Under the pieces are notes generated by a model. The model worked only from the letters and a program-made list of their open reading frames with translations, was not told the DNA's origin and did not search any database. Both the position numbers and the translations under genes were made by a program. A stretch of 64,000 bases of DNA from IMG/VR virus record IMGVR_UViG_3300042540_001399, positions 124,001 through 188,000 of that record. One strand, 5' to 3'. This document shows, in pieces, positions 21,588 to 57,526 of this stretch; within the stretch, counting starts at the first letter, position 1; each line of letters opens with the position of its first letter.

Positions 21588-22862
21588 GTGATAATAGAAA
21601 AACTTTCAAATATTCCACAATCTAGTGGTTGTTACCTTTTCAAAAATGAAAAGGGTCAGATCATCTATGTGGGTAAGTCAAAGTTTTTACCCAAACGAGT
21701 TAAGTCTTATTTTCAAAAAAATCACAAAGATCAAAAGACAACTTTGTTGGTAAACGAAATTCGTGATGTCGAGTTCATGACTACTAACGACGAATCACAG
21801 GCTCTTTTGTTGGAGGATGAACTTATCAAGTCTTTGAAACCCAAATACAACATCAAGGCAAAAGATGACAGATCTCGTCGTTGGTTTATTACTTTGACTG
21901 ATGAGGAGTTCCCAAGACTTTTGGTTTGTAATCCTTCTAACTTTTTAGGTGAAGTTCTTTTGGAATCTACAAGTTCCAACTCTTGTTATGAGATCTATGA
22001 AATGGTTCACGACATCTTTAATCTTCGTTCTTGTTCTTACAACTTGACTGAAGAAAACATTTCAAACGAAAAGTTCAAGACTTGTTTGGAGTTTCATCTT
22101 GGTCGTTGTAATGCTCCTTGTATTTCAAACATTCTAAAATTCTCCTACAAAAAGATTGTAAGTGAAATGAAAGAAGTATTTTCTTTTGAGTTTGACAAGG
22201 TTCGTAACCGTTTGAAAAGATCTATGAAATACTTTTCTGAATCTATGGAGTTTGAAAAAGCTCAAGAGTTCAAAACTAAAATTTCTGTTATTGATTTACT
22301 TCAGAAGAAACTTGAGCCTTTTCGCGTTCGAAAGTATAATGATTTTGCTCGCCAGTTCAAAGAGTCTTTGGGTCTAATCAATGTTCCTACTTTGATCGAA
22401 GCGTTCGATAATTCACACAATGCTGGTGACTGTCAGGTGTCCGCTCTTGTTCGTTACAAGAATGGTAAAACTGATAAGTCAAACTATCGTAAGTTTAACA
22501 TCAAAACTGTTGAGGGTCCTGATGATTACGCATCTTTTTCTGAAGTTCTTTCTCGTCGTTTTACAAGACTTTTGAATGAAAAACAAGAGTTACCTTCACT
22601 TGTTGTTATTGATGGTGGTAAAGGTCAGTTGGGTGTTGCAAAACAAGTATTTGAATCTCTTGGTTTGTTGTCTCGTATTGATTTGATTTCTATTTCTAAA
22701 AACGACAAACACCAGTCTCAAACAATTCATTTGATTAATGGGTCATCATATGACATTCCAAGAAATGAGTTTGGGTTTTTATTAGCTGAAGTTCAGAATG
22801 AAGTTCACAGATTTGTGATTTCATTTCATAGAAATAAAAAAAGTAAAAAATTATTTTTGTAA
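21588..22862 (+). CDS. uvrC: UvrC-like excinuclease (GIY-YIG, UVR and RNase H-like domains; no C-terminal HhH)
   Basis: GCYLF...IIYVGKS, MEFEKA, EAFDNSH, DDYAS, IDGGKGQ and EVHRF; GTG start 4 nt after TATATTTG. Confidence 0.9.
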   Translation: MIIEKLSNIPQSSGCYLFKNEKGQIIYVGKSKFLPKRVKSYFQKNHKDQKTTLLVNEIRDVEFMTTNDESQALLLEDELIKSLKPKYNIKAKDDRSRRWFITLTDEEFPRLLVCNPSNFLGEVLLESTSSNSCYEIYEMVHDIFNLRSCSYNLTEENISNEKFKTCLEFHLGRCNAPCISNILKFSYKKIVSEMKEVFSFEFDKVRNRLKRSMKYFSESMEFEKAQEFKTKISVIDLLQKKLEPFRVRKYNDFARQFKESLGLINVPTLIEAFDNSHNAGDCQVSALVRYKNGKTDKSNYRKFNIKTVEGPDDYASFSEVLSRRFTRLLNEKQELPSLVVIDGGKGQLGVAKQVFESLGLLSRIDLISISKNDKHQSQTIHLINGSSYDIPRNEFGFLLAEVQNEVHRFVISFHRNKKSKKLFL

Positions 22863-42233: not shown

Positions 42234-42281
42234 AAAATGGTTTACTATCTATTGTTAGATATAAACAATAAAATTAAAAAA

Positions 42282-43847
42282 ATGAAACAAATTTATCTAA
42301 CAATTTTTTCTGTAATGATGACAGTTTTGTCTTATTCACAGAATTCTTTTTGGACACCTACAACATACAGAGGTGCTTTTCCTATAACAGATAACACACC
42401 ACAAACAGATTGGACTCATGGTTGGTCTAATTGGGATCCACAAAATACACAGTACCCAACAACTCAATTGGTAATTAATACTGATGTAACTACTGATGCA
42501 ACTTGGTCAGGTGTTATAAAATTACAAAACAAAGTTTATATTAAAAATGGTGCAACACTTACAATACTTCCAGGAACTATAATTAGAGGTGATTACAATA
42601 GTCAAGGAACTCTAATTGTAACAAGAGGATCAAAAATTATTGCTGATGGAAATGTGAACCAACCAATCGTCTTTACCTCAAACAATCCTGTCGGAAGTAG
42701 AAACGAAGGAGATTGGGGAGGTTTAGTTCTTTTGGGGCATGCCATTAATAATCAACCTGGTGGTGTTGTTAACATAGAAGGATTACCACCATCTACAAAC
42801 ACTCAACATGGAGGAGGTAATGATAATGATAACTCAGGAGTGTTAAGATATGTAAGAATCGAATTTGCAGGAATTCCACTTGAACCAAACAAAGAAATTA
42901 ACGGATTAACATTCGGTTCAGTTGGAAGTTTAACTACAGTGGATTATGTACAAGTAAGTTTCTGTGGAGACGACTCGTTTGAGTGGTTCGGAGGAACGGT
43001 AAACTGTAAACATTTAATTTCATATTCAACAATAGATGACGATTTTGATACTGACTTTGGATACAGAGGTAAGGTTCAATTCGGTTTGGCGATTAGAAAT
43101 GAAAATTTGTCAGACGCAGCGGGCGACTCAAATTGTTTCGAATCGGATAATGACGCACAGGGTAGCGCTTCTCAACCATTGACGGCACCTATTTTTTCTA
43201 ACTTCACGATTATTGGGGCTAAGGGTGATGGGACTGTAATTCTTCCAGTGGGTGAAAAATTTGAAAAAGCTTTCAGATTAAGAAGAAATACTGCAACTTC
43301 TGTTTTCAACTCAATTGCGACAGGATGGGAAAAAGGATTATCTTTAGAGGGTGTTCCTGTTGAAAATAACATAACTTCAGGTGTTATGAACTTTAATAGT
43401 AACATACTTTCAAACTTTAATACTGGGACAGTTTGTTATACAACAACACCAAACTTTCTTTCATCTTATTTTTCTCAAAACTTGAATGACTCAACTTTAA
43501 CGAATCAAGACATCAATTGGGTTAACCCATTTGTTCAAATAGGATCAACACCTGATTTTAGATTGAATGGGTTCTCGTTTGCGGCAATTGGTGCCAACTT
43601 CCCTTTAAACATATTTGGAAATATTGCGTCAGTCGATGAACTTAATAATGGGTACACAATTTATCCTAACCCGGCAACCAATCAAATTACGGTTAATGAA
43701 AAAACTAATATCGAAGTTATGGATCAAAACGGGAAATTATTAGTAAGTTCTTTTGATAATCAAGTTGAATTGATAAATCTACCAAATGGAGTTTATTTTG
43801 TTAGACTAAACAACTCCAAGGTTGAAAAGTTAATAATTAGAAAATGA
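42282..43847 (+). CDS. Secreted beta-helix-like protein with T9SS (Por) C-terminal sorting domain
   Basis: Signal peptide; GDWGGLVLLG, DNSGVLRYVRIEFAG and DDSFEWFGG; C-terminal IYPNPA...GVYFVRL...KLIIRK. Confidence 0.85.
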   Translation: MKQIYLTIFSVMMTVLSYSQNSFWTPTTYRGAFPITDNTPQTDWTHGWSNWDPQNTQYPTTQLVINTDVTTDATWSGVIKLQNKVYIKNGATLTILPGTIIRGDYNSQGTLIVTRGSKIIADGNVNQPIVFTSNNPVGSRNEGDWGGLVLLGHAINNQPGGVVNIEGLPPSTNTQHGGGNDNDNSGVLRYVRIEFAGIPLEPNKEINGLTFGSVGSLTTVDYVQVSFCGDDSFEWFGGTVNCKHLISYSTIDDDFDTDFGYRGKVQFGLAIRNENLSDAAGDSNCFESDNDAQGSASQPLTAPIFSNFTIIGAKGDGTVILPVGEKFEKAFRLRRNTATSVFNSIATGWEKGLSLEGVPVENNITSGVMNFNSNILSNFNTGTVCYTTTPNFLSSYFSQNLNDSTLTNQDINWVNPFVQIGSTPDFRLNGFSFAAIGANFPLNIFGNIASVDELNNGYTIYPNPATNQITVNEKTNIEVMDQNGKLLVSSFDNQVELINLPNGVYFVRLNNSKVEKLIIRK

Positions 43848-44693: not shown

Positions 44694-45011
44694 ATGTTAA
44701 GACACCAAAACCCAATTCAGATCAATTCTACAACAACAGGATTTGCTTCACCAGCGGAAACATACGTTGACAAACGATTAGATCTAAATGACTTGATTGT
44801 GAAAGATCACTACACAACATTTTATTTTAGATATTCAGGACCATCAGTCTTTGGAATCAATCAAGGTGATACAATAGTAATTGATCGAACTGAGAATCCA
44901 AAAGATGGGGATTTGGTAATCTTAACTGATAAGAATCATTTCAAACTTCGAGAGTTCAAAGGACAAAAAAACTTATGGGGAAAAGTAACATGGGTATTAA
45001 AGAAAATGTAA
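44694..45011 (+). CDS. umuD: UmuD-like (S24) protein, short and degenerate
   Basis: GFASPA...LDLNDL...SGPS...GDTIVIDR; directly upstream of umuC; start moved to 44694. Confidence 0.8.
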   Translation: MLRHQNPIQINSTTTGFASPAETYVDKRLDLNDLIVKDHYTTFYFRYSGPSVFGINQGDTIVIDRTENPKDGDLVILTDKNHFKLREFKGQKNLWGKVTWVLKKM

Positions 45012-46207
45012 AAAAGATTGGAATAATTGATTGTAACAACTTCTATGTTAGTTGTGAAAGATTATTTAATCCTGAATCTATTGGAAGACCAACCGTTGTA
45101 TTATCAAACAATGACGGATGTGTAATTGCCAGATCACAAGAAGCAAAAGACCTTGGAATTAAAATGGGGGAACCATTCTTTAAGAGTCGAGAGTTCATGG
45201 ACCAACATAGATTTTGTGTATACTCATCAAACTACAACCTGTATGGTGATATGTCAGATAGGGTTATGAAAGTAATCTCGGAGTTTGGAAATGATATTGA
45301 GGTATATTCAATTGATGAAGCGTTTGTTGATTTTTCAAACATACCTTTAGAAGATCTCACAGAAACATTAATAGCAATTAAAGAAGAAGTTAGAAAGAAA
45401 GTTGGAATTCCTGTATCAATTGGTGTTGGCCCAAACAAAACTTTAGCTAAACTAACATCCTTTTTAGCTAAACAACAGCTAAACTATAATGGTGTATGTT
45501 CATATTGGGACTTACCAAACTTTAGAAATATGTCTTATGGGATTAATGTTGATGAGGTTTGGGGTATTGGTAGAAAGTGGGCAAAAAAACTAAAAAACAT
45601 TGGGGTAGAATCAGTAGGTCAGTTTATTAACACAAACGAATATACTGTTAGAAAGTTGATGAATATCAATGGAGTAAAAACTCAATTGGAGTTAAAAGAA
45701 ATGTATTGTTTTTTAATTCAAAAGAAGTCCAAACCAAAAAAAAATATTGCATCTACTCGTTCTTTTGGAAAAGATGTACAGGACTTTGATCAACTGGGTG
45801 AAGCGATGTATACATACATTAAAAACGGTGTGAAGAAATTAAGTCAAAACAAGTTGTTTGCAAATAAAGTAACTATATTTGTTTCAGGAAATTATCATAA
45901 AGGTGATAAGTATTACCATTCTAAAACAATCAAACTTCAAAATCCAACTAGAGATCCTGACCTTATTTGGTCACAGATTCACGAACAATATAAAGTTCTT
46001 TGTGACAAATCTGAAAAGTATAAAAAGTGTGGAATAGTATTTAATGAACTTACTCCTGATACAATTATCCAAACTTCTTTATTTAGTGACGATGTTAAAG
46101 TTGTAAACGCCCCACAGAATGAAAACCATGAGTGGGAAATGAAACAAGACTATATTACTCAAAAGTACACAACATCATGGAATGAGTTACCACTTGTTTT
46201 TGTTTGA
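44990..46207 (+). CDS. umuC: Y-family DNA polymerase V catalytic subunit
   Basis: DCNNFYVSCER, SNNDGC, YSIDEAF and STRSFG; C-terminal YTTSWNEL. Confidence 0.93.
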   Translation: MGIKENVKKIGIIDCNNFYVSCERLFNPESIGRPTVVLSNNDGCVIARSQEAKDLGIKMGEPFFKSREFMDQHRFCVYSSNYNLYGDMSDRVMKVISEFGNDIEVYSIDEAFVDFSNIPLEDLTETLIAIKEEVRKKVGIPVSIGVGPNKTLAKLTSFLAKQQLNYNGVCSYWDLPNFRNMSYGINVDEVWGIGRKWAKKLKNIGVESVGQFINTNEYTVRKLMNINGVKTQLELKEMYCFLIQKKSKPKKNIASTRSFGKDVQDFDQLGEAMYTYIKNGVKKLSQNKLFANKVTIFVSGNYHKGDKYYHSKTIKLQNPTRDPDLIWSQIHEQYKVLCDKSEKYKKCGIVFNELTPDTIIQTSLFSDDVKVVNAPQNENHEWEMKQDYITQKYTTSWNELPLVFV

Positions 46208-52250: not shown

Positions 52251-53531
52251 ATGAACCTACAAGAATCCATAAGAAGAATATTAAGGGAAGATTTGTTAAA
52301 TAAATCAAAATTCTTTCTAAGAAGAATTAATTTAGATGAGGTTAAAAAATTACTTCCAATCAACGCAGAACAAGTACATGGTGAAACAAAAAGTTATGAG
52401 CAATTCAAGTATGAATTAACTTTAAGAGCCGTGGAGGCAATTATGTGGAATGATTATGAACTCGGGTGGGAAGATCTACCAGAACAAGAGGAAATAGAAT
52501 TTGTTAATGAAGTTTCCAACATGTTTAATAAAACAATCAAAAAGTTATATAATTCTTATAGTGGAAGAATATTAAGGGAAGAAGATTATTCTCCGGCGGG
52601 TAAAGAAATAATACCAAATAAAATTGTGATCCACAAGTCCAATCCGATCTTCAGAAATAAGATAATGGAAAATGGTCTTAAAGTAAGGGCAGGAGAATGT
52701 TACAAAATATATGTTGGTTATGGTGTTAAGTGTAAACCTGCAATTTTTGCAACCAACTCAACGAACAAAAGAGCATGGTTTGATTCAACATACGACGATG
52801 ATATATGGGAAATAAATACAGAAATGATTCCTGATGTAAAGTGGTATAAAGATAGACACTTTGAGTCAAGGTCAAAACATATTGTTACGTTTCAAGACAT
52901 ACCAAAAGAAGCAATAACTTTAAAATATGAAGGAAGTGGAAGTGGAGATGTAGAAAAGTGGGATAAAGATTCGCCAAACATAGTTAGAGAATCCCAAATA
53001 GACCCTTATCTTCTAAGAAGATTTCATGAGTTCGACGACACTTTCAAATTGGTATCATCAAATGTTTATCCATGTGATTTCAGACATCCACAACATTATT
53101 GGAATTACACGATAGAAAGAGTACTGGAAGCTATTTATTTTAATTTTTTCTATGAAACTAAATCCGAATTAAATTGGGAGTCCCTTTCTGATGAAATTCT
53201 TTATCTTCTAAATAGAACATATTATGATGAATTAGTTTCAGACTGGGAATCCAAGTGTAATAATAATATTCATGAAGATTTTTCACCTGAGTTTTTAAGA
53301 AGAATAACTATAATTGATACGTTAATTGACGCAACCCTTTCTTCTATGTACCCATGTGAATATAGTTCTGAAAAAGCTTTTCTTCGTGGTTTATACGACG
53401 AATTATATTGGTCATTTATAGGGGAAGACTTAAAAATTATTGACTATTCAGATATTATTGATTTTATAGAAGAAAACAGAAAAGAAGACATATATGATTA
53501 TTGGGACGAATATTGTGTTCGATTATCATAA
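52251..53531 (+). CDS. Four-module protein: LRR module, ADP-ribosyltransferase-like domain, two more LRR modules
   Basis: VIHKS...IMENGL...IFAT...DIPKEAI; modules separated by ILREE, VRE and IHE. Confidence 0.6.
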   Translation: MNLQESIRRILREDLLNKSKFFLRRINLDEVKKLLPINAEQVHGETKSYEQFKYELTLRAVEAIMWNDYELGWEDLPEQEEIEFVNEVSNMFNKTIKKLYNSYSGRILREEDYSPAGKEIIPNKIVIHKSNPIFRNKIMENGLKVRAGECYKIYVGYGVKCKPAIFATNSTNKRAWFDSTYDDDIWEINTEMIPDVKWYKDRHFESRSKHIVTFQDIPKEAITLKYEGSGSGDVEKWDKDSPNIVRESQIDPYLLRRFHEFDDTFKLVSSNVYPCDFRHPQHYWNYTIERVLEAIYFNFFYETKSELNWESLSDEILYLLNRTYYDELVSDWESKCNNNIHEDFSPEFLRRITIIDTLIDATLSSMYPCEYSSEKAFLRGLYDELYWSFIGEDLKIIDYSDIIDFIEENRKEDIYDYWDEYCVRLS

Positions 53532-53532
53532 T

Positions 53533-53610
53533 TAACTATGGTTTTCAATTACTCGGTTCATAGTCCTTCACTTCGTTCGGAATTCACCTCATAATTTAAT
53601 ACCATAGTTA
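53533..53610 (-). other. Hairpin with three tandem G.A pairs and a C-GAA-G triloop
   Basis: Minus strand: TAACTATGGT...GA-GGT-GA-AT-TCC-GA-AC-GAA-GT-GA-A-GGA-CT-AT-GA-ACC-GA...ACCATAGTTA. Confidence 0.7.
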
Positions 53611-53650
53611 TATTTATTATACATAAAGGATAACAAATCAAAAGACAACA

Positions 53651-53974
53651 ATGTCACTTAAAAAAATAATTAGAAAAGTATTGATTCAAGAATCGGGAAA
53701 CATAGATCCTTACATACTTCGAAGACTTGATTTAGATAAGTTCAATGATCTCTTAGATAAAGGAAAAGTATATATGTTTTATGAATCCAATTCATTAGAA
53801 GAATTCAAATGGAAGTTAGTTACGGCAACATTAGAAAACTATCATTACTACAAGTATGAAACTGATATAGATACAAGTGATGGATATTTCGATCAAACAA
53901 TACAAAGTCTTATCAACTTATTTGAGCCCAAGTTAGAAACTATTTATAACAGATTAAAAAATGAAAGAGGATGA
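53651..53974 (+). CDS. Leader plus LRR-motif module
   Basis: KKIIRKVLIQE; IDPYILRRLD. Confidence 0.65.
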   Translation: MSLKKIIRKVLIQESGNIDPYILRRLDLDKFNDLLDKGKVYMFYESNSLEEFKWKLVTATLENYHYYKYETDIDTSDGYFDQTIQSLINLFEPKLETIYNRLKNERG

Positions 53975-54594
53975 ACAAACAATTAAATCCATTTTTGTTA
54001 CGTAGAGTTGATCCTAAAGTGTTAGACGCCGAATTTGAGGATTGTTTAGATACTGCCACAAACATGTACAACAGGGGAAAAGACAAAAGTTCGGTATCAT
54101 TACCTCAGTTTAGAAATAGAGTCATATCCATGTTGATAGACTCAATTCACTATGATATACATAGCTCTGTTCCAGAAGAACTTCAGTGGTATGATGATGT
54201 CTTTTATATGTTAAAAGATTATTATGGGGGTAAGATTAAAAAAAGATTAGATCAATTAAATTCCAAAACTATAAATGAATCCAAGTTACAAATTTATATG
54301 TTAAGAAGAATAGATGTTGTTGAACATTACCTTAACAATTTAAGTTCAAAAGATGTTTGTATACACTGGTCAGACGATGAGGCTTTAGAATATTCTAGTC
54401 AAATACTTTCAGACATGTCAAGAATTATTATTGATGAACTACACTATGTTGATTCAGAATCATATGTAGACAAGTATGATGAAATATATCAATTTTTAAT
54501 TGATCTTGATTATCCGAAAAGAATAGTAGACTTCTTTTATGATTCATTAAAAACTTGTGAAGATAGACATAGATATAAATTTAGAAAACCATAA
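53971..54594 (+). CDS. Two LRR-motif modules
   Basis: NPFLLRRVD and INE-SKLQIYMLRRID. Confidence 0.65.
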   Translation: MNKQLNPFLLRRVDPKVLDAEFEDCLDTATNMYNRGKDKSSVSLPQFRNRVISMLIDSIHYDIHSSVPEELQWYDDVFYMLKDYYGGKIKKRLDQLNSKTINESKLQIYMLRRIDVVEHYLNNLSSKDVCIHWSDDEALEYSSQILSDMSRIIIDELHYVDSESYVDKYDEIYQFLIDLDYPKRIVDFFYDSLKTCEDRHRYKFRKP

Positions 54595-54676
54595 AATAAT
54601 ATAACACATTCACTCATTACAAAGGGGACCTCAATCGGTTCCCTTTTTCATTCACTCATATGTTATACTATTTTAT
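54591..54676 (-). other. Second tandem G.A hairpin
   Basis: 19-bp outer stem (two G.T); ATGAGTGAAT paired with ATGAGTGAAT; inner AAAGGG/CCCTTT and ACC/GGT. Confidence 0.7.
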
Positions 54677-55796
54677 AAAACTATAATCCCCCCATTTAGT
54701 TAAGTCCTAATATATTGTCCCCCCATTTAAGTTGACCAATGATTACACATTTTGCGTAACACATTTTGTATAATGTTATGGTACAACTATCAAGACAACT
54801 TTGTACCAAAGTTATATTTTAGTGTTGTACTTGTATTATATTTTGGTGTGGTGATTAGTTACTAAATGAATGTGTATATGAAAAGGGTATAAACATACCC
54901 ACTTATTACCACTTATTAGAAGTTATTACCACTTTACTATGTGTTATTAGTTGTGTAGATTTTAGTGGTCAGGATGTTGAAAAACCCACTAAAGTGGTCG
55001 TTGAAGTTATCTATTTAATGATCTATAAGTGATCTACTAACGACATAAATGTCTGTCCACGGCAACAGTACCATTAATATATGTTTTTCGCTGGAGAATA
55101 GACATAGTGAAAAAAGTGGTTCTGTAGGGGTCAAGAAGGGGGATTTTTTAGGTCTGTAGATAGCAACAGGTACAATTTCGGTGGTAGAAAGTGGGAAGTA
55201 TAGAGTGGGGAAAAGTGGTAGAAAACCCGTAAAGAGATTGTGTCGTGTGTAACGCTCGACTGACATTTTGACAAAAACAAGTTTTTTAACATAATTATTT
55301 ATTAACAATTCCCCCTGGTGATGGAGATATTAAAAGTTTTCAACAAAGTAATTGACAAAAGTGGTGATACCATAACCCTGACATATTGTCACCAAAACTA
55401 TTCTGGTACATGTGTGTATAAAGAACATAACTTGGTTGGTAAAAATAAACCTATCAGACAAAGGTTCTACACCCTTGAGTCATCAGACATGGGGGATGTA
55501 TTAGAATATCTATTTACACAGGGACATATTAAAGATGGGGACTTCAATACCATTGGTCCCCAACTACAAGACTATTCATTAGGTCTTATATATGATCATC
55601 CATTTGATCAATAATATAACGACGAATAAAGTTAGTTATATTTGACGTGGGGAAGTAGTCCAAAAAGAAAGCACACACTGTAAGACCAAACAGAAATAAC
55701 AACGTGATTACAACATAGACCATAAGAAACATTTCCATAACAGAATAATAACACACACCATTCACCTTTTCAAGATCATTAGTATATTTATTATTA

Positions 55797-55920
55797 GAAG
55801 TTCATTTTCCCCACAGTAGGGAATTAGTTGTTCAAGACCCAGGCGGTCTGTAAAGTTCAAGATGAAGTTGACAACATAATTTTCTTAAGGATCCCTATTC
55901 GGTGATGGGGAATTTTTTAT
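55797..55920 (+). ncRNA. Candidate structured late sRNA
   Basis: TATTTAT at 55785; stems TTCCC/GGGAA, AATTAGTTG-TCAA/TTGA-CAAC-TAATT and AGACC/GGTCT; terminal hairpin with T tract. Confidence 0.4.
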
Positions 55921-56010
55921 GCTCCCTTATTTTTTTTATAAGGCATCCTGCCTCTGATTGAGCTCCACGGGTTGTTCCCCCGAGCCCGACTTAACCTTAT
56001 CATCAGTGTC
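55921..56010 (-). ncRNA. Candidate structured sRNA behind a host-sigma promoter
   Basis: TACCTTTG on the minus strand at 56015-56022; stems CTGAT/ATCAG, GGGCTC/GAGCTC, GGG/CCC and GGCA/TGCC. Confidence 0.45.
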
Positions 56011-56347
56011 AATACAAAGGTACGGGATTAATTTGACACTACCAAATTTTCCCCCATGTTTATTTGATCAAAAGTTATTAACACCACTATAGTCGTTTAC
56101 TAAGTTATCAACATGACAGTGTGTCACATGGGGGACCAATAGAGTTTGGCATACCCCTACCATAGGGGGATCCACAAGAATTACCCCCTCCCCCCTCCCG
56201 TATGCCCCCTTATATGACATATTGTCAGGGGAAAAAGGGGGGTCAATCCCAAATATAACATATTCGTAAAAAAAATTCTGGAAAAATTTTTGGGAAAATT
56301 TGGAAACTATACTATCCCATATTATACAGTAAAGTATATTTATCAAT

Positions 56348-56653
56348 ATGGAAGAAGGTTTAAGATGGTTTTTAAGAAGAACAAATGATCCTGAAATAAT
56401 AAATCACATCGAGGAACTTGTGGAAGAGGGTTTTGATTATGAAGACGTTTGTGATTACATCGGTAGGAAAAGAGAATATGTTAGGGAAATAGTTCGTGGG
56501 TCAACTATTACTTTTATAAATTCTTATGATGGATTAGATAAACTAAATGAGTCAAGTGTGTTAAGGATTTATAATTTTATTATGTCCAGATTTCTTGAGT
56601 TAATTACGGACCATTATGACTCTAATATCGAAGATTGTGATGGATTCTTATAA
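56348..56653 (+). CDS. LRR-motif module protein
   Basis: WFLRRTND...VCDY...EDC; TATTTAT at 56337. Confidence 0.65.
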   Translation: MEEGLRWFLRRTNDPEIINHIEELVEEGFDYEDVCDYIGRKREYVREIVRGSTITFINSYDGLDKLNESSVLRIYNFIMSRFLELITDHYDSNIEDCDGFL

Positions 56654-56715
56654 TGTGTAAAGTAAAACCCTTACAATCTGTAAAGTGAAACCCTTATAAT
56701 CTGTAAAGTCGACCC
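56647..56715 (+). repeat. Three tandem 23-bp repeats
   Basis: CTTAYAATSTGTAAAGTnnAcCC; TGTAAAGT at 56656, 56679 and 56702. Confidence 0.85.
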
Positions 56716-56812
56716 CTTTTTAATTTACCTTCAAATACTAAAAAAAATTTCTGGAAAAATTTTTCAAAAATATAGGTTTTAGACATTCTACATATTTATT
56801 GGAAAATACATT

Positions 56813-57526
56813 ATGGAACTAAATAGATTTAAACAATTATTGGAATCAAGCTTGGGGGATGTTAGACCACTTATATCTGAACAAGAAGTAAAAGATTTTT
56901 CAGCTCAGATTTTTGAAGAACTAAAAACAAACGGATTTACAATATCAAATGTAAACGCCAATCTTGTTCAAGCGTCAAAGGCGTCACTTACACTTTTATT
57001 TCAAGTACAGGTTGATAAGCAACAACAGAAATATTATAGACTAATTGAAATAGATTATATGTTGGCGGTTGATCCAAATAATGAAGGGATTTCACCTGAG
57101 TTATTAAAAACATTTACAGGTGTGGGTGCCAGTGGGGAGTACATTGGTCCTGTTTATTCTAAACCAACAGAAGAAGATAAAGAGTTTTTAAAAACTTTAT
57201 CCAACAAAGATAGGAACATGATGACCAATAGTGGACCTACAGAAAAAAGAGCAGGTTTTAAAATGTGGAAATCTAATCTTGGGGGTCTTGATCTTACGAC
57301 TTTGGGACAATCAAAAGAAACCACAAGTATATACAAGTACATGAAAGATTTTTATGCTTTGGGTGTTACCGCACAAAAATATCAAAACTTTAATAGTGCT
57401 AATTTTGCAGGTCAAGTTAAGATTGTTGGTCAGGAATTAAAATCGGCAGCCGCTCCTATGGTTGACAAGGCTAAACAAGGAATACAAAATCTGGCATCTA
57501 AGGTCAAAGGAAAACTACAACGTTAA
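56813..57526 (+). CDS. MExNRFKQLLES-leader hypothetical protein
   Basis: 24-aa leader nearly identical to 60624; bodies unrelated. Confidence 0.7.
   Translation: MELNRFKQLLESSLGDVRPLISEQEVKDFSAQIFEELKTNGFTISNVNANLVQASKASLTLLFQVQVDKQQQKYYRLIEIDYMLAVDPNNEGISPELLKTFTGVGASGEYIGPVYSKPTEEDKEFLKTLSNKDRNMMTNSGPTEKRAGFKMWKSNLGGLDLTTLGQSKETTSIYKYMKDFYALGVTAQKYQNFNSANFAGQVKIVGQELKSAAAPMVDKAKQGIQNLASKVKGKLQR

What the first reader, a model, noticed from the sequence alone, without database searches (positions are those of the whole stretch)
54591..54676. Second G.A-paired hairpin with different sequence, same strand and architecture, at the edge of the non-coding region
Seen: the apparent direct repeat CATTCACTCAT x2 becomes ATGAGTGAAT on the minus strand, which pairs with its copy as A-T, T-A, G.A, A.G, G.T, T.G, G.A, A.G, A-T, T-A. 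It sits inside a 19-bp outer stem whose two mismatches are G.T only on the minus strand, and around an AAAGGG/CCCTTT and ACC/GGT core. Inference: two unrelated sequences 1 kb apart with the same non-canonical design point to selection on structure and a family of ssDNA elements.
Basis: partly seen in the sequence, partly recalled or inferred. Interest (0 to 1): 0.7.

Follow-up and report, generated by a model that had tools for sequence, protein, structure and literature searches.

The report
Terminator nested in G·A-zippered phage hairpin
A real 86-base hairpin, conserved at one site in a group of uncultured freshwater jumbo phages, holds an ordinary transcription terminator inside a longer stem whose interior of invariant G·A and G·T pairs forms only on the opposite strand, which points to a second, still unproven, strand-specific role.

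Summary
Window 54591-54676 has two 40-nt arms with 29 Watson-Crick pairs. It is the best long hairpin in the whole 290,887-bp phage genome. On the minus strand the other 11 positions are 6 G·A, 4 G·T and 1 A·C.

AAAGGGGACC-TCAATC-GGTTCCC followed by TTTTT is a textbook plus-strand intrinsic terminator, one of 33 on that strand. It begins at the stop codon of a plus-strand gene.

Ten distinct homologs from related phages show the following:
- Eight pairs in the outer stem have compensatory double changes.
- The two "internal loop" segments are the best conserved part, and all G·A positions are invariant.
- Ten pair positions are wobble on the minus strand only, against one on the plus strand.
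- The minus strand folds more stably in 10 of 10 homologs.

The element is single-copy per genome. It sits between a variable gene slot and a strongly conserved ORF-free region. Hairpin 53533-53610 has the same design and ranks second genome-wide.

It is therefore a conserved pair at one locus, not a dispersed family. Whether the rod acts as single-stranded DNA or as leftward RNA is undecided. No integrase or HUH (Y1) transposase gene was found in the genome.

The parts
54591..54606 (-). Left arm of the outer stem (+ strand ATAAAATAATATAACA). It overlaps the TAA stop codon (54592-54594) of ORF 53971-54594.
   Evidence: The stem covaries in homologs: pairs 4/90, 6/88, 9/85, 10/84, 11/83, 14/80 and 17/77 of A5 have double changes.
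54607..54620 (-). Left conserved segment (+ strand CATTCACTCATTAC; minus strand GTAATGAGTGAATG). It contains the left copy of the direct repeat. On the minus strand it faces the right segment as A-T, G·A/A·G and G·T pairs.
   Evidence: It is 15-17 of 17 identical in all homologs. The G·A columns are invariant.
54621..54648 (+). Intrinsic terminator core: stem AAAGGGGACC / GGTTCCCTTT, loop TCAATC (54631-54636) and T-run 54644-54648. It has G·U on the plus strand, which is A·C on the minus strand.
   Evidence: It is one of 33 plus-strand terminators against 0 in shuffled sequence. In homologs the stem is GGAGACC/GGTCTCC or GGAGAC/GTCTCC, always followed by T5.
54647..54660 (-). Right conserved segment (+ strand TTCATTCACTCATA), with the right copy of the direct repeat at 54649-54659.
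   Evidence: The C at 54655 is T in haplotypes H3/H4 and in L036, L041 and L045. That makes the central pair A-T.
54661..54676 (-). Right arm of the outer stem (+ strand TGTTATACTATTTTAT).
53533..53610 (-). Companion hairpin 1. It has 29-nt arms and a 20-nt loop. On the minus strand it has 22 WC, 1 G·T, 5 G·A (two tandems in TGAG/TGAA context) and 1 A·A. It starts 2 nt after the stop codon of ORF 52251-53531.
   Evidence: (I2). The ortholog is at L029 160-234, with a changed outer stem and the same G·A tandems.
54677..55317 (.). Conserved ORF-free region bordered by the hairpin. It is nearly invariant among close haplotypes and alignable across the divergent clade. It contains an invariant GTATAAT block (~54768-54774), TTGTAC/GTACAA repeats, CCACTT x3 then AAGTGG x4, and TGACATTTTGACA.

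Best explanation
This is a composite element with two layers that read different strands.

**Layer 1 (well supported).** The inner GC hairpin plus T5 is a Rho-independent terminator. It ends rightward transcription of the variable gene block just before a conserved control region.

**Layer 2 (inferred).** The full 40-pair rod is a strand-specific recognition hairpin that forms when the minus strand is single-stranded. That could be the lagging-strand template or an extruded DNA strand, or a leftward RNA.
- In the folded strand the two conserved direct-repeat segments (minus strand ATGARTGAAT) lie antiparallel.
- They zip into a two-fold symmetric duplex of A-T, tandem sheared-type G·A/A·G and G·T pairs, clamped between two stems whose sequences are free to covary.
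- On the plus strand the same positions are C·U/A·C. The mRNA therefore forms only the terminator and is not locked into the long rod.
- The symmetric, sequence-conserved non-canonical duplex is most plausibly the docking site of a (dimeric) phage protein. That protein would act at the left border of the conserved region, which is a candidate origin or regulatory region.

**Status of each step.** Shown: the anatomy, the conservation, the covariation, the strand asymmetry, the single-copy synteny and the terminator features. Inferred: that the rod forms in vivo, that it is DNA rather than RNA, that a protein binds it, and what process it serves.
For: - **Terminator:**. T5 is retained in all homologs. 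The element lies 0-63 nt after a plus-strand stop codon in 8 of 8 loci.
- **Structure:** 8 pairs carry compensatory changes, and 0 of 500 shuffles reach the observed covariation.
- **Strand:** 10 pair positions are G·U on the minus strand only, against 1 on the plus strand. The minus strand has the lower MFE in 10 of 10 homologs with RNA parameters and in 7 of 10 with DNA parameters. Genome-wide, the plus strand is on average the more stable one by 0.9 kcal/mol.
- **Mismatch types:** all 12 transversion-type mismatches of the two hairpins are purine·purine on the minus strand, and 11 of them are G·A.
- **Conserved interior:** the G·A columns are invariant. The interior segments are 94% identical in L036, where the stems are 55-75% identical and the neighbouring 98-aa protein is 53% identical.
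- **Geometry:** repeat spacing varies from 42 to 45 bp between homologs (sequences). That spacing would change helical phasing on duplex DNA, but it leaves the two copies opposite each other in a hairpin.
- **Copy number and context:** the element is single-copy and syntenic, and it stays linked to the conserved downstream region rather than to the upstream gene.
Against: - There is no direct evidence that the minus strand is ever folded, and none for any binding protein.
- Six of the nine homologs were retrieved with a pattern that fixes 21 nt of the interior. Part of the conservation is therefore circular. Only L036/L029, the four close haplotypes and columns 22, 23, 71 and 72 are free of this.
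- The plus-strand interior contains no G. Every transition mismatch there must be A·C, so the wobble asymmetry partly restates a composition bias. That bias could instead serve to keep plus-strand RNA loops unpaired.
- With DNA parameters the strand difference is small: -12.8 against -12.1 kcal/mol in the window.
- Some homologs have C·C (minus strand G·G) or T·T mismatches in the outer stem (L038, L039, L041, L044, L045, L036).
- Intramolecular template switching at quasipalindromes can copy a change from one arm to the other without selection.
- GC skew gives no sign of an origin here.
Confidence: 0.4

Rival explanations
1. The element works on plus-strand RNA only, as a terminator nested in a longer dyad like lambda tI/sib. 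Transcripts that stop at T5 carry only the inner hairpin and are stable. Read-through (antiterminated) transcripts also contain the right arm, fold the long hairpin and are cut by RNase III, which destabilises the upstream message (retroregulation). Alternatively the two conserved C/U/A-rich loops are held single-stranded as a binding platform.
For: - The terminator lies exactly inside a longer inverted repeat, and a terminated RNA cannot contain the right arm (sequence).
- The plus-strand RNA fold is -24.6 kcal/mol with z -8.4.
- In haplotypes H2/H3 the plus-strand outer stem is 16 perfect pairs.
- G-free loops would stay unpaired on RNA.
- Lambda int retroregulation is established (Plunkett & Echols 1989, cited in PMC5371410).
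Against: - On the plus strand a 14 x 14 interior of C·U and A·C oppositions separates the stems, so there is no continuous ~20-bp dsRNA.
- Ten wobble positions favour the other strand, against one for this strand.
- The plus strand is the less stable one in 10 of 10 homologs.
- Hairpin 1 shares the design but has no terminator on either strand.
Confidence: 0.2
2. The element is a bidirectional transcriptional insulator. The inner hairpin plus U5 stops rightward RNA polymerase. The whole rod, stabilised by G·A and G·U on minus-strand RNA and ending in the U-rich 3' arm (UUAUUUUAUGGUUUUCU), stops or stabilises leftward transcripts leaving the promoter-rich conserved region. This protects the gene block from antisense RNA.
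For: - Minus-strand RNA folds at -32.8 kcal/mol with z -6.4, in the top 0.14% of minus-strand windows genome-wide.
- In all homologs the outer stem has a 5' A-run and a 3' T-run on both strands.
- The position is between a gene block and a regulatory region.
Against: - The outer stem is purely A/U at its base, and the minus-strand inner stem is followed by only CUUUG. Both are poor terminator features.
- No conserved leftward promoter was identified.
- Mere termination does not explain why 2 x 17 nt of interior are more conserved than either stem.
- Hairpin 1 has no U-run on either strand.
Confidence: 0.15
3. The element works at the duplex-DNA level. The direct repeats are iteron-like sites for a DNA-binding protein flanking the terminator, or the AT-rich palindrome extrudes as a cruciform under the negative supercoiling generated by the strong promoter ~100 bp downstream.
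For: - Conserved repeats lie next to a region full of other repeated motifs: CCACTT/AAGTGG and TTGTAC.
- A partial inverted copy (ATGAATGTGT..ATGAAAAGGG) lies at 54860-54887 (I7 and I11).
Against: - Repeat spacing varies from 42 to 45 bp between homologs, which changes helical phasing.
- Duplex binding sites would not require the flanking stems to covary.
- The purine·purine purity of the mismatches has no meaning in duplex DNA.
Confidence: 0.1
4. The element is a recombination or mobility signal of a gene cassette, like integron attC sites or the ends of IS200/IS605-type elements. Two same-strand imperfect hairpins, each just 3' of an ORF, would flank a slot whose gene content differs between phages.
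For: - The gene content between or beside the hairpins differs: 107+207 aa in the window, an additional 150-aa ORF in L011/L017, and one 164-aa ORF in L029.
- L045 has a hybrid of the hairpin-2 left half and the hairpin-1 right half.
- attC sites fold on the bottom strand and share structure rather than sequence (PMC5027507).
Against: - The genome has no tyrosine recombinase (PF00589) and no Y1 transposase (PF01797).
- The AAC/GTT in the outer stem is not conserved. It becomes AAG/CTT and AAT/ATT, so there is no R''/R' core.
- The 544-bp insertion in L011 is not flanked by hairpins.
- The element is single-copy per genome.
Confidence: 0.05

Closest known systems
Rho-independent (intrinsic) transcription terminators
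   Same: The core is a 7-10 bp GC-rich stem with a 6-9 nt loop and a T5 run. It lies directly after the stop codon of a co-directional gene. It is one of 33 such sites on the plus strand of this genome.
   Different: It is embedded in a further 2 x 30 nt of conserved, paired sequence that a terminated transcript cannot contain. That outer part is better paired on the opposite strand.
Lambda tI / sib retroregulator (terminator inside a longer RNase III hairpin)
   Same: The terminator is nested within a larger dyad, so terminated and read-through RNAs would fold differently.
   Different: Here the extension is interrupted on the mRNA strand by a 14 x 14 interior of C·U/A·C. It pairs continuously only on the complementary strand.
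Strand-specific single-stranded DNA signals: integron attC sites, plasmid ssi/Frpo hairpins, G4/phiX-type complementary-strand origins
   Same: These are imperfect hairpins that work on one strand only. Their structure is more conserved than their stem sequence. attC sites sit just 3' of ORFs and fold on the bottom strand (PMC5027507). Frpo is a folded ssDNA that mimics duplex DNA (PMC11541004).
   Different: This element has no conserved R''/R' cores and the genome has no integrase. I saw no -35/-10 pair formed in the rod. It lies in a dsDNA jumbo phage, is single-copy, contains a plus-strand terminator, and is defined by a symmetric tandem G·A interior made from direct repeats.
Tandem sheared G·A motifs in nucleic-acid duplexes, e.g. 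(GGAAT)n/(AATGG)n satellite self-duplexes and RNA internal loops (own knowledge)
   Same: 5'-Y-G-A-R-3' steps face each other (TGAG, TGAA) and are flanked by A-T and G·T pairs.
   Different: Those are structural chemistry precedents, not genetic elements. No structural data exist for this sequence.
PeSL (promoter-early stem-loop) cassettes of T4-type phages (own knowledge)
   Same: A stem-loop or terminator next to a promoter region borders a slot of variable small genes.
   Different: PeSLs are repeated many times per genome and mediate shuffling by homology. This element is single-copy with no repeats elsewhere.

Membership tests
Intrinsic terminator (+ strand) | GC-rich stem, short loop, and a run of at least 5 T immediately 3' of the stem | tested here: met
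   The sequence AAAGGGGACCTCAATCGGTTCCC + TTTTTCAT was found by my scan, which gave 33 hits on +, 18 on - and 0 in shuffled sequence. T5 is present in all 10 homologs.
Intrinsic terminator (+ strand) | Lies downstream of a co-directional gene end | tested here: met
   It overlaps the stop codon of ORF 53971-54594. It lies 0-63 nt after a + ORF stop in 8 of 8 loci.
Intrinsic terminator (+ strand) | Transcripts end at the T-run | not testable with these tools
   The RNA runs held only a few unstranded contigs of this phage.
Lambda sib-type RNase III retroregulator | Terminator enclosed by a longer dyad | tested here: met
Lambda sib-type RNase III retroregulator | About two turns of near-continuous dsRNA on the mRNA strand | tested here: not met
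   The + strand fold leaves a 14 x 14 open interior. Only 73% of cells are paired on +, and all interior oppositions are C·U or A·C.
Integron attC site | Conserved R'' (RYYYAAC) and R' (GTTRRRY) core sites | tested here: not met
   AAC/GTT is present in the window but is replaced by AAG/CTT (L045), AAT/ATT (L036), AAC/ATT (L039) and AAC/CTT (L041).
Integron attC site | Integron integrase (tyrosine recombinase) in the same replicon | tested here: not met
   PF00589 has no match in the 290,887-bp record, while all 14 control genomes match.
Integron attC site | Imperfect hairpin 3' of an ORF, folding on the bottom strand, with unpaired features | tested here: inconclusive
   Position and strand bias fit. 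In the six divergent homologs (L036, L038, L039, L041, L044, L045) the inner stem has an extra C on the minus strand.
IS200/IS605 ends or REP/RAYT elements | Y1 HUH transposase, and many or paired similar hairpins | tested here: not met
   PF01797 is absent. The genome has only two hairpins of this design and their sequences differ.
Frpo/ssi single-stranded DNA promoter | -35 and -10 hexamers formed in the stem of the folded strand | tested here: inconclusive
   Read by eye only. The minus-strand 3' arm has TGTTATATT (extended -10-like) but no -35 at 16-18 nt. Feature definition is from PMC11541004.
Any Rfam family | Match to a curated covariance model | tested here: not met
   cmscan of 52500-57500 on both strands at E<=1 gave only two chance-level hits elsewhere and none on the hairpin.

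The most novel reading that the evidence does not exclude
The rod is a new kind of strand-specific single-stranded-DNA signal in a dsDNA jumbo phage. Two direct repeats placed in opposite arms of a hairpin self-pair into a symmetric G·A/G·T/A·T duplex. A phage protein recognises that duplex only when the minus strand is unwound. The signal marks the edge of the replication origin (priming or helicase-loading site) or of a cassette-exchange hotspot. Because the other strand cannot form the rod, the same DNA can also serve as a plain mRNA terminator.
Probability: 0.2. Interest if true: 0.8.

Novelty: new variant of a known kind. Interest (0 to 1): 0.6.

Why it matters
Strand-specific folded-DNA signals are known from integrons, conjugative plasmids and ssDNA phages, but not from large dsDNA phages.

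This element shows an unusual conservation pattern. The stems covary, while an "internal loop" of non-canonical pairs stays invariant at protein divergences of 35-53% identity. That is the signature of a functional structured nucleic acid.

The element is also short enough (about 90 nt) to test directly with oligonucleotides. If the minus-strand rod is real, it would give three things:
- a handle on where and how this uncultured clade of freshwater jumbo phages starts replication or exchanges genes;
- a natural example of one DNA segment encoding two different structures for its two strands;
- a defined symmetric G·A duplex as a protein-recognition motif.

If it is not real, the element is still a clean example of a terminator with an RNA-processing or insulating extension.

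Tried and rejected
- **Near and distant DNA searches and a protein search of cultured phages:** no match.
- **The 207-aa upstream gene:** it is an ORFan of this lineage, so orthologs could not be reached through it.
- **The 426-aa and 237-aa neighbours:** they hit hundreds of proteins, but only through promiscuous domains or N-termini without synteny. L020 showed no syntenic hairpin.
- **Exact 11-mer pair pattern in viral contigs:** besides near-identical genomes, it found only unrelated tandem repeats.
- **Metagenome scan with the inner stem:** one identical copy.
- **Repeats of the hairpin or its flanks elsewhere in the genome:** none. There is no genome-wide motif for CATTCACTCAT, CCCCCATTTA or TGACATTTTGACA.
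- **Sequence homology between hairpins 1 and 2:** not significant (p about 0.14).
- **GC skew:** it follows gene orientation, with no inflection at the site.
- **Sequencing runs:** X18 and X19 are probably DNA, and X20 and X27 have almost nothing on the stretch. There were no read-end pileups or strand information.
- **Promoter-block pattern (TAACRCATTTKGTRTAAT):** it returned mostly chance matches, and none of the 27 new loci has the hairpin by covariance model.
- **Plus-strand promoter reading of the right repeat (TTCACT-17-TATAAA):** not conserved in homologs.
- **Pairing of the repeats with 54860-54887:** not conserved in L038.
- **K-turn or sarcin-ricin motifs:** rejected by eye, because there is no bulge (the register is ungapped).
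- **Pfam and PHROGs on neighbouring ORFs:** nothing informative.

Full report
**Context**

The window is bases 124001-188000 of a 290,887-bp IMG/VR virus record, estimated 99% complete. The genome is about 30% GC and almost all genes are on the plus strand. A T9SS C-terminal sorting domain in ORF 42237-43847 suggests a Bacteroidota host. The DNA occurs in many lake-water metagenomes. No cultured phage is similar.

**The observation**

- One search reports arms 54591-54630 and 54637-54676, 40 nt each and 73% complementary, with a 6-nt loop.
- The same call reports the direct repeat CATTCACTCAT at 54607 and 54649. These are the only two copies in the genome.
- The outer stem is 19 uninterrupted pairs when the minus strand is folded as DNA. 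It is interrupted on the plus strand.
- On the plus strand the 40 positions are 29 WC, 1 G·T, 4 A·C and 6 C·T. On the minus strand this reads 4 G·T, 1 A·C and 6 G·A, with nothing else.
- All folds beat 200 of 200 shuffles, with z from -5.8 to -8.4.
- It is the best long ungapped hairpin in the genome.
- With scoring that tolerates G·T and G·A but punishes other mismatches, it ranks first of both strands at 30.75.

The hairpin begins at the stop codon (54592-94) of plus-strand ORF 53971-54594. Its core, AAAGGGGACC-TCAATC-GGTTCCC followed by TTTTT, is a standard intrinsic terminator.

A simple scan finds 33 such sites on the plus strand and 18 on the minus strand, against none in shuffled sequence. 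Eleven lie in the window, and this is one of them. The one wobble of the inner stem is G·U on the plus strand.

A transcript that terminates at T5 cannot contain the right repeat or the right outer arm. The outer 2 x 30 nt must therefore serve something other than that termination event.

**Close relatives**

Sixteen near-identical proteins of the ORFan upstream gene led to contigs carrying four haplotypes of the hairpin. Haplotype H1 is the window itself; H2 to H4 are the variant copies.

- The inner hairpin is invariant.
- In H2 and H3 the window's A·C is a G-C pair.
- H4 (L011/L017) has a perfect 14-bp outer stem with two double changes, a 13-nt deletion at the base of the stem, and a 544-bp insertion with a 150-aa ORF just left of it.
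- The right repeat is CATTCATTCAT in H3 and H4. The perfect direct repeat of the window is therefore probably a derived state.

**Divergent relatives**

A G·A-aware scan of loci fetched for other reasons turned up orthologs of both hairpins in L029 (the same contig as L036). They lie in the same order and on the same strand, upstream of the same conserved region. A pattern built from the conserved interior then found L038, L039, L041, L044/L046 and L045.

Ten distinct sequences were aligned on each strand (A5 minus, A6 plus).

| Measure | Minus strand | Plus strand |
|---|---|---|
| Cells forming a standard pair | 80.1% | 73.2% |
| Pairs with changes on both sides | 8 | 8 |
| Shuffles reaching the observed covariation | 0/500 | 0/500 |
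| Pair positions that are wobble on this strand only | 10 | 1 (inner stem) |
| Mean MFE, RNA parameters (kcal/mol) | -33.2 | -25.9 |
| Mean MFE, DNA parameters (kcal/mol) | -14.6 | -12.8 |

- Slid registers fall to 31-56% of cells paired.
- The six G·A pairs are invariant in all ten sequences. Columns 22, 23, 71 and 72 were not fixed by my search pattern.
- The minus strand is the more stable in 10 of 10 homologs with RNA parameters and in 7 of 10 with DNA parameters. Genome-wide, the plus strand is slightly the more stable on average.
- In L036, which was found independently of the interior, identity to the window varies by segment:

| Segment | Identity to the window |
|---|---|
| Two interior segments | 16/17 and 16/17 |
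| Outer arms | 12/16 and 11/16 |
| Inner stem | 6/9 and 4/7 |
| Loop | 2/7 |

Covarying stems around a sequence-invariant "loop" are the usual signature of a functional structured nucleic acid.

**Genomic logic**

- A covariance model built on A5 finds one strong hit (97-100 bits) in each of five genomes. Otherwise it finds only ordinary terminators, so the element is single-copy.
- In all eight loci it lies 0-63 nt after a plus-strand stop codon. The upstream genes are mostly unrelated between phages.
- The 130-640 nt ORF-free region downstream is conserved.
- The 98-aa gene beyond that region is also conserved, at 35-53% amino-acid identity among the window/L011, L036 and L044.
- That region is nearly invariant among close haplotypes, more so than the coding flanks.
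- It contains an invariant GTATAAT block and CCACTT/AAGTGG iterons. It also contains repeats that change as a set between clades: GTACAA/TTGTAC against TGTTCA/TGAACA.

The hairpin therefore belongs with this control region and borders a variable gene slot.

**Hairpin 1 (53533-53610)**

It starts 2 nt after a stop codon. It has the same minus-strand design, including two tandem G·A steps in TGAG/TGAA context, and is more stable on the minus strand. It is invariant in close relatives. In L029 it keeps the tandems with a different outer stem.

It has no terminator features. The two hairpins are not significantly similar overall, but they share ATTCAC(C)TCATA. L045 has a hybrid of the two.

**Interpretation**

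The terminator layer is well supported. For the outer rod I favour a strand-specific hairpin on the minus strand, for four reasons:

- the wobble asymmetry;
- the purine·purine purity of mismatches in two independent hairpins (11 G·A and 1 A·A of 12);
- the invariance of those positions;
- the variable 42-45 bp spacing of the repeats, which matters on duplex DNA but not in a hairpin.

Placing direct repeats in opposite arms creates a two-fold symmetric self-duplex, which is a natural target for a dimeric protein.

Whether the strand is DNA or leftward RNA cannot be decided here. GC skew is uninformative and the public runs gave no strand or end information.

**Caveats**

- The G-free plus-strand interior makes part of the asymmetry a composition effect.
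- Part of the homolog set was retrieved through the interior sequence.
- Several homologs have G·G or A·A mismatches in the outer stem.
- Quasipalindrome template switching could mimic compensation.

**Known families**

- It is not an attC site. The cores are not conserved and there is no integrase.
- It is not an IS200/IS605 or REP element. There is no Y1 transposase and only two copies exist.
- It matches no Rfam family.
- It does not meet the continuous-dsRNA requirement of a sib-type RNase III site on the mRNA strand.
- It works like, but is not a member of, the class of strand-specific folded-DNA signals (attC, ssi/Frpo; PMC5027507, PMC11541004).

I rate it a new variant of a known kind: a terminator with a conserved, opposite-strand G·A-zippered extension. 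Interest is 0.6.

Noticed in passing
window 54677-55317 (also L036, L038, L039, L044, L045): This ORF-free region is more conserved than the neighbouring genes and can be aligned across phages whose 98-aa neighbour is only 35-53% identical. It has an invariant GTATAAT block at ~54768-54774 preceded by ACACATTTTG x2. It has CCACTT x3 (54899-54934) followed by AAGTGG x4 (54991-55218) in inverted arrangement. It is a candidate origin or complex operator/promoter, or an ncRNA gene.
   Followed up: partly
window 54780-54850 vs L036/L045: The repeated hexamers GTACAA/TTGTAC of the window clade are replaced at the same alignment positions by TGTTCA/TGAACA in L036 and L045. This looks like either covarying helices of an RNA or a set of protein sites whose specificity changed together.
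   Followed up: partly
window 55261, 55379, 56215: Operator-like palindromes TGACATTTTGACA, TGACATATTGTCA and TGACATATTGTCA occur here. The first is conserved in L036 and L044, just upstream of the 98-aa gene. Metagenome contigs with other flanks share 55258-55291.
   Followed up: partly
window 53567-53595 (inside hairpin 1): A sigma-70-like promoter, TTCACT-17-CATAAT, sits inside hairpin 1 upstream of the 107-aa gene. L029 has TACACT-18-CATAAT at the same place (by eye, from the sequence).
   Followed up: no
window 53568: Three Logan contigs from different runs (L012, L017, L018) all begin exactly at 53568, the centre of hairpin 1. This may mark a graph branch or structural variant there.
   Followed up: no
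L011 3004-3548 / L017: A 544-bp insertion carrying a 150-aa ORF lies between the 207-aa gene and the hairpin in one haplotype. A 13-nt deletion sits at the other base of the stem.
   Followed up: partly
L045 (reverse strand) ~946-1040: This hybrid element has the hairpin-2 left half plus a terminator with T8, followed by the hairpin-1 right half (CACCTCATAATTTAAT). It lies 1.5 kb upstream of that phage's own hairpin 2.
   Followed up: partly
window 52251-53531 (especially ~52650-53000): The 426-aa protein carries a ~140-aa domain found at ~80-97% identity in hundreds of proteins of very different lengths. The same stretch has a very high summed depth in other metagenomes.
   Followed up: no
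window 56101-56280: This is the second most minus-strand-biased, strongly folding stretch in the neighbourhood, at -40.8 against -32.3 kcal/mol per 100 nt. It overlaps minus-strand ORF 56068-56346 and G/C-run motifs.
   Followed up: no
genome 1-~8000 (outside the window): A giant gene is made of 9-nt-periodic repeats (GGAACAAATGG, GGTACTAATGG and similar, dozens of copies). It resembles a collagen-like or G-T-x repeat protein.
   Followed up: no
window 21588-22862 and 44975-46207: The phage encodes a UvrC-like nuclease (GIY-YIG + UvrC RNase H domain) and a Y-family (ImpB/UmuC) polymerase.
   Followed up: no
G003:C1:29527-29601 (L052): An ordinary terminator, CATTACAAAGGGGACC..GGTCCCCTTTTTT, shares the TTACAAAGGGGACC left half with the window's core. 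It lacks the repeats and the outer stem.
   Followed up: no
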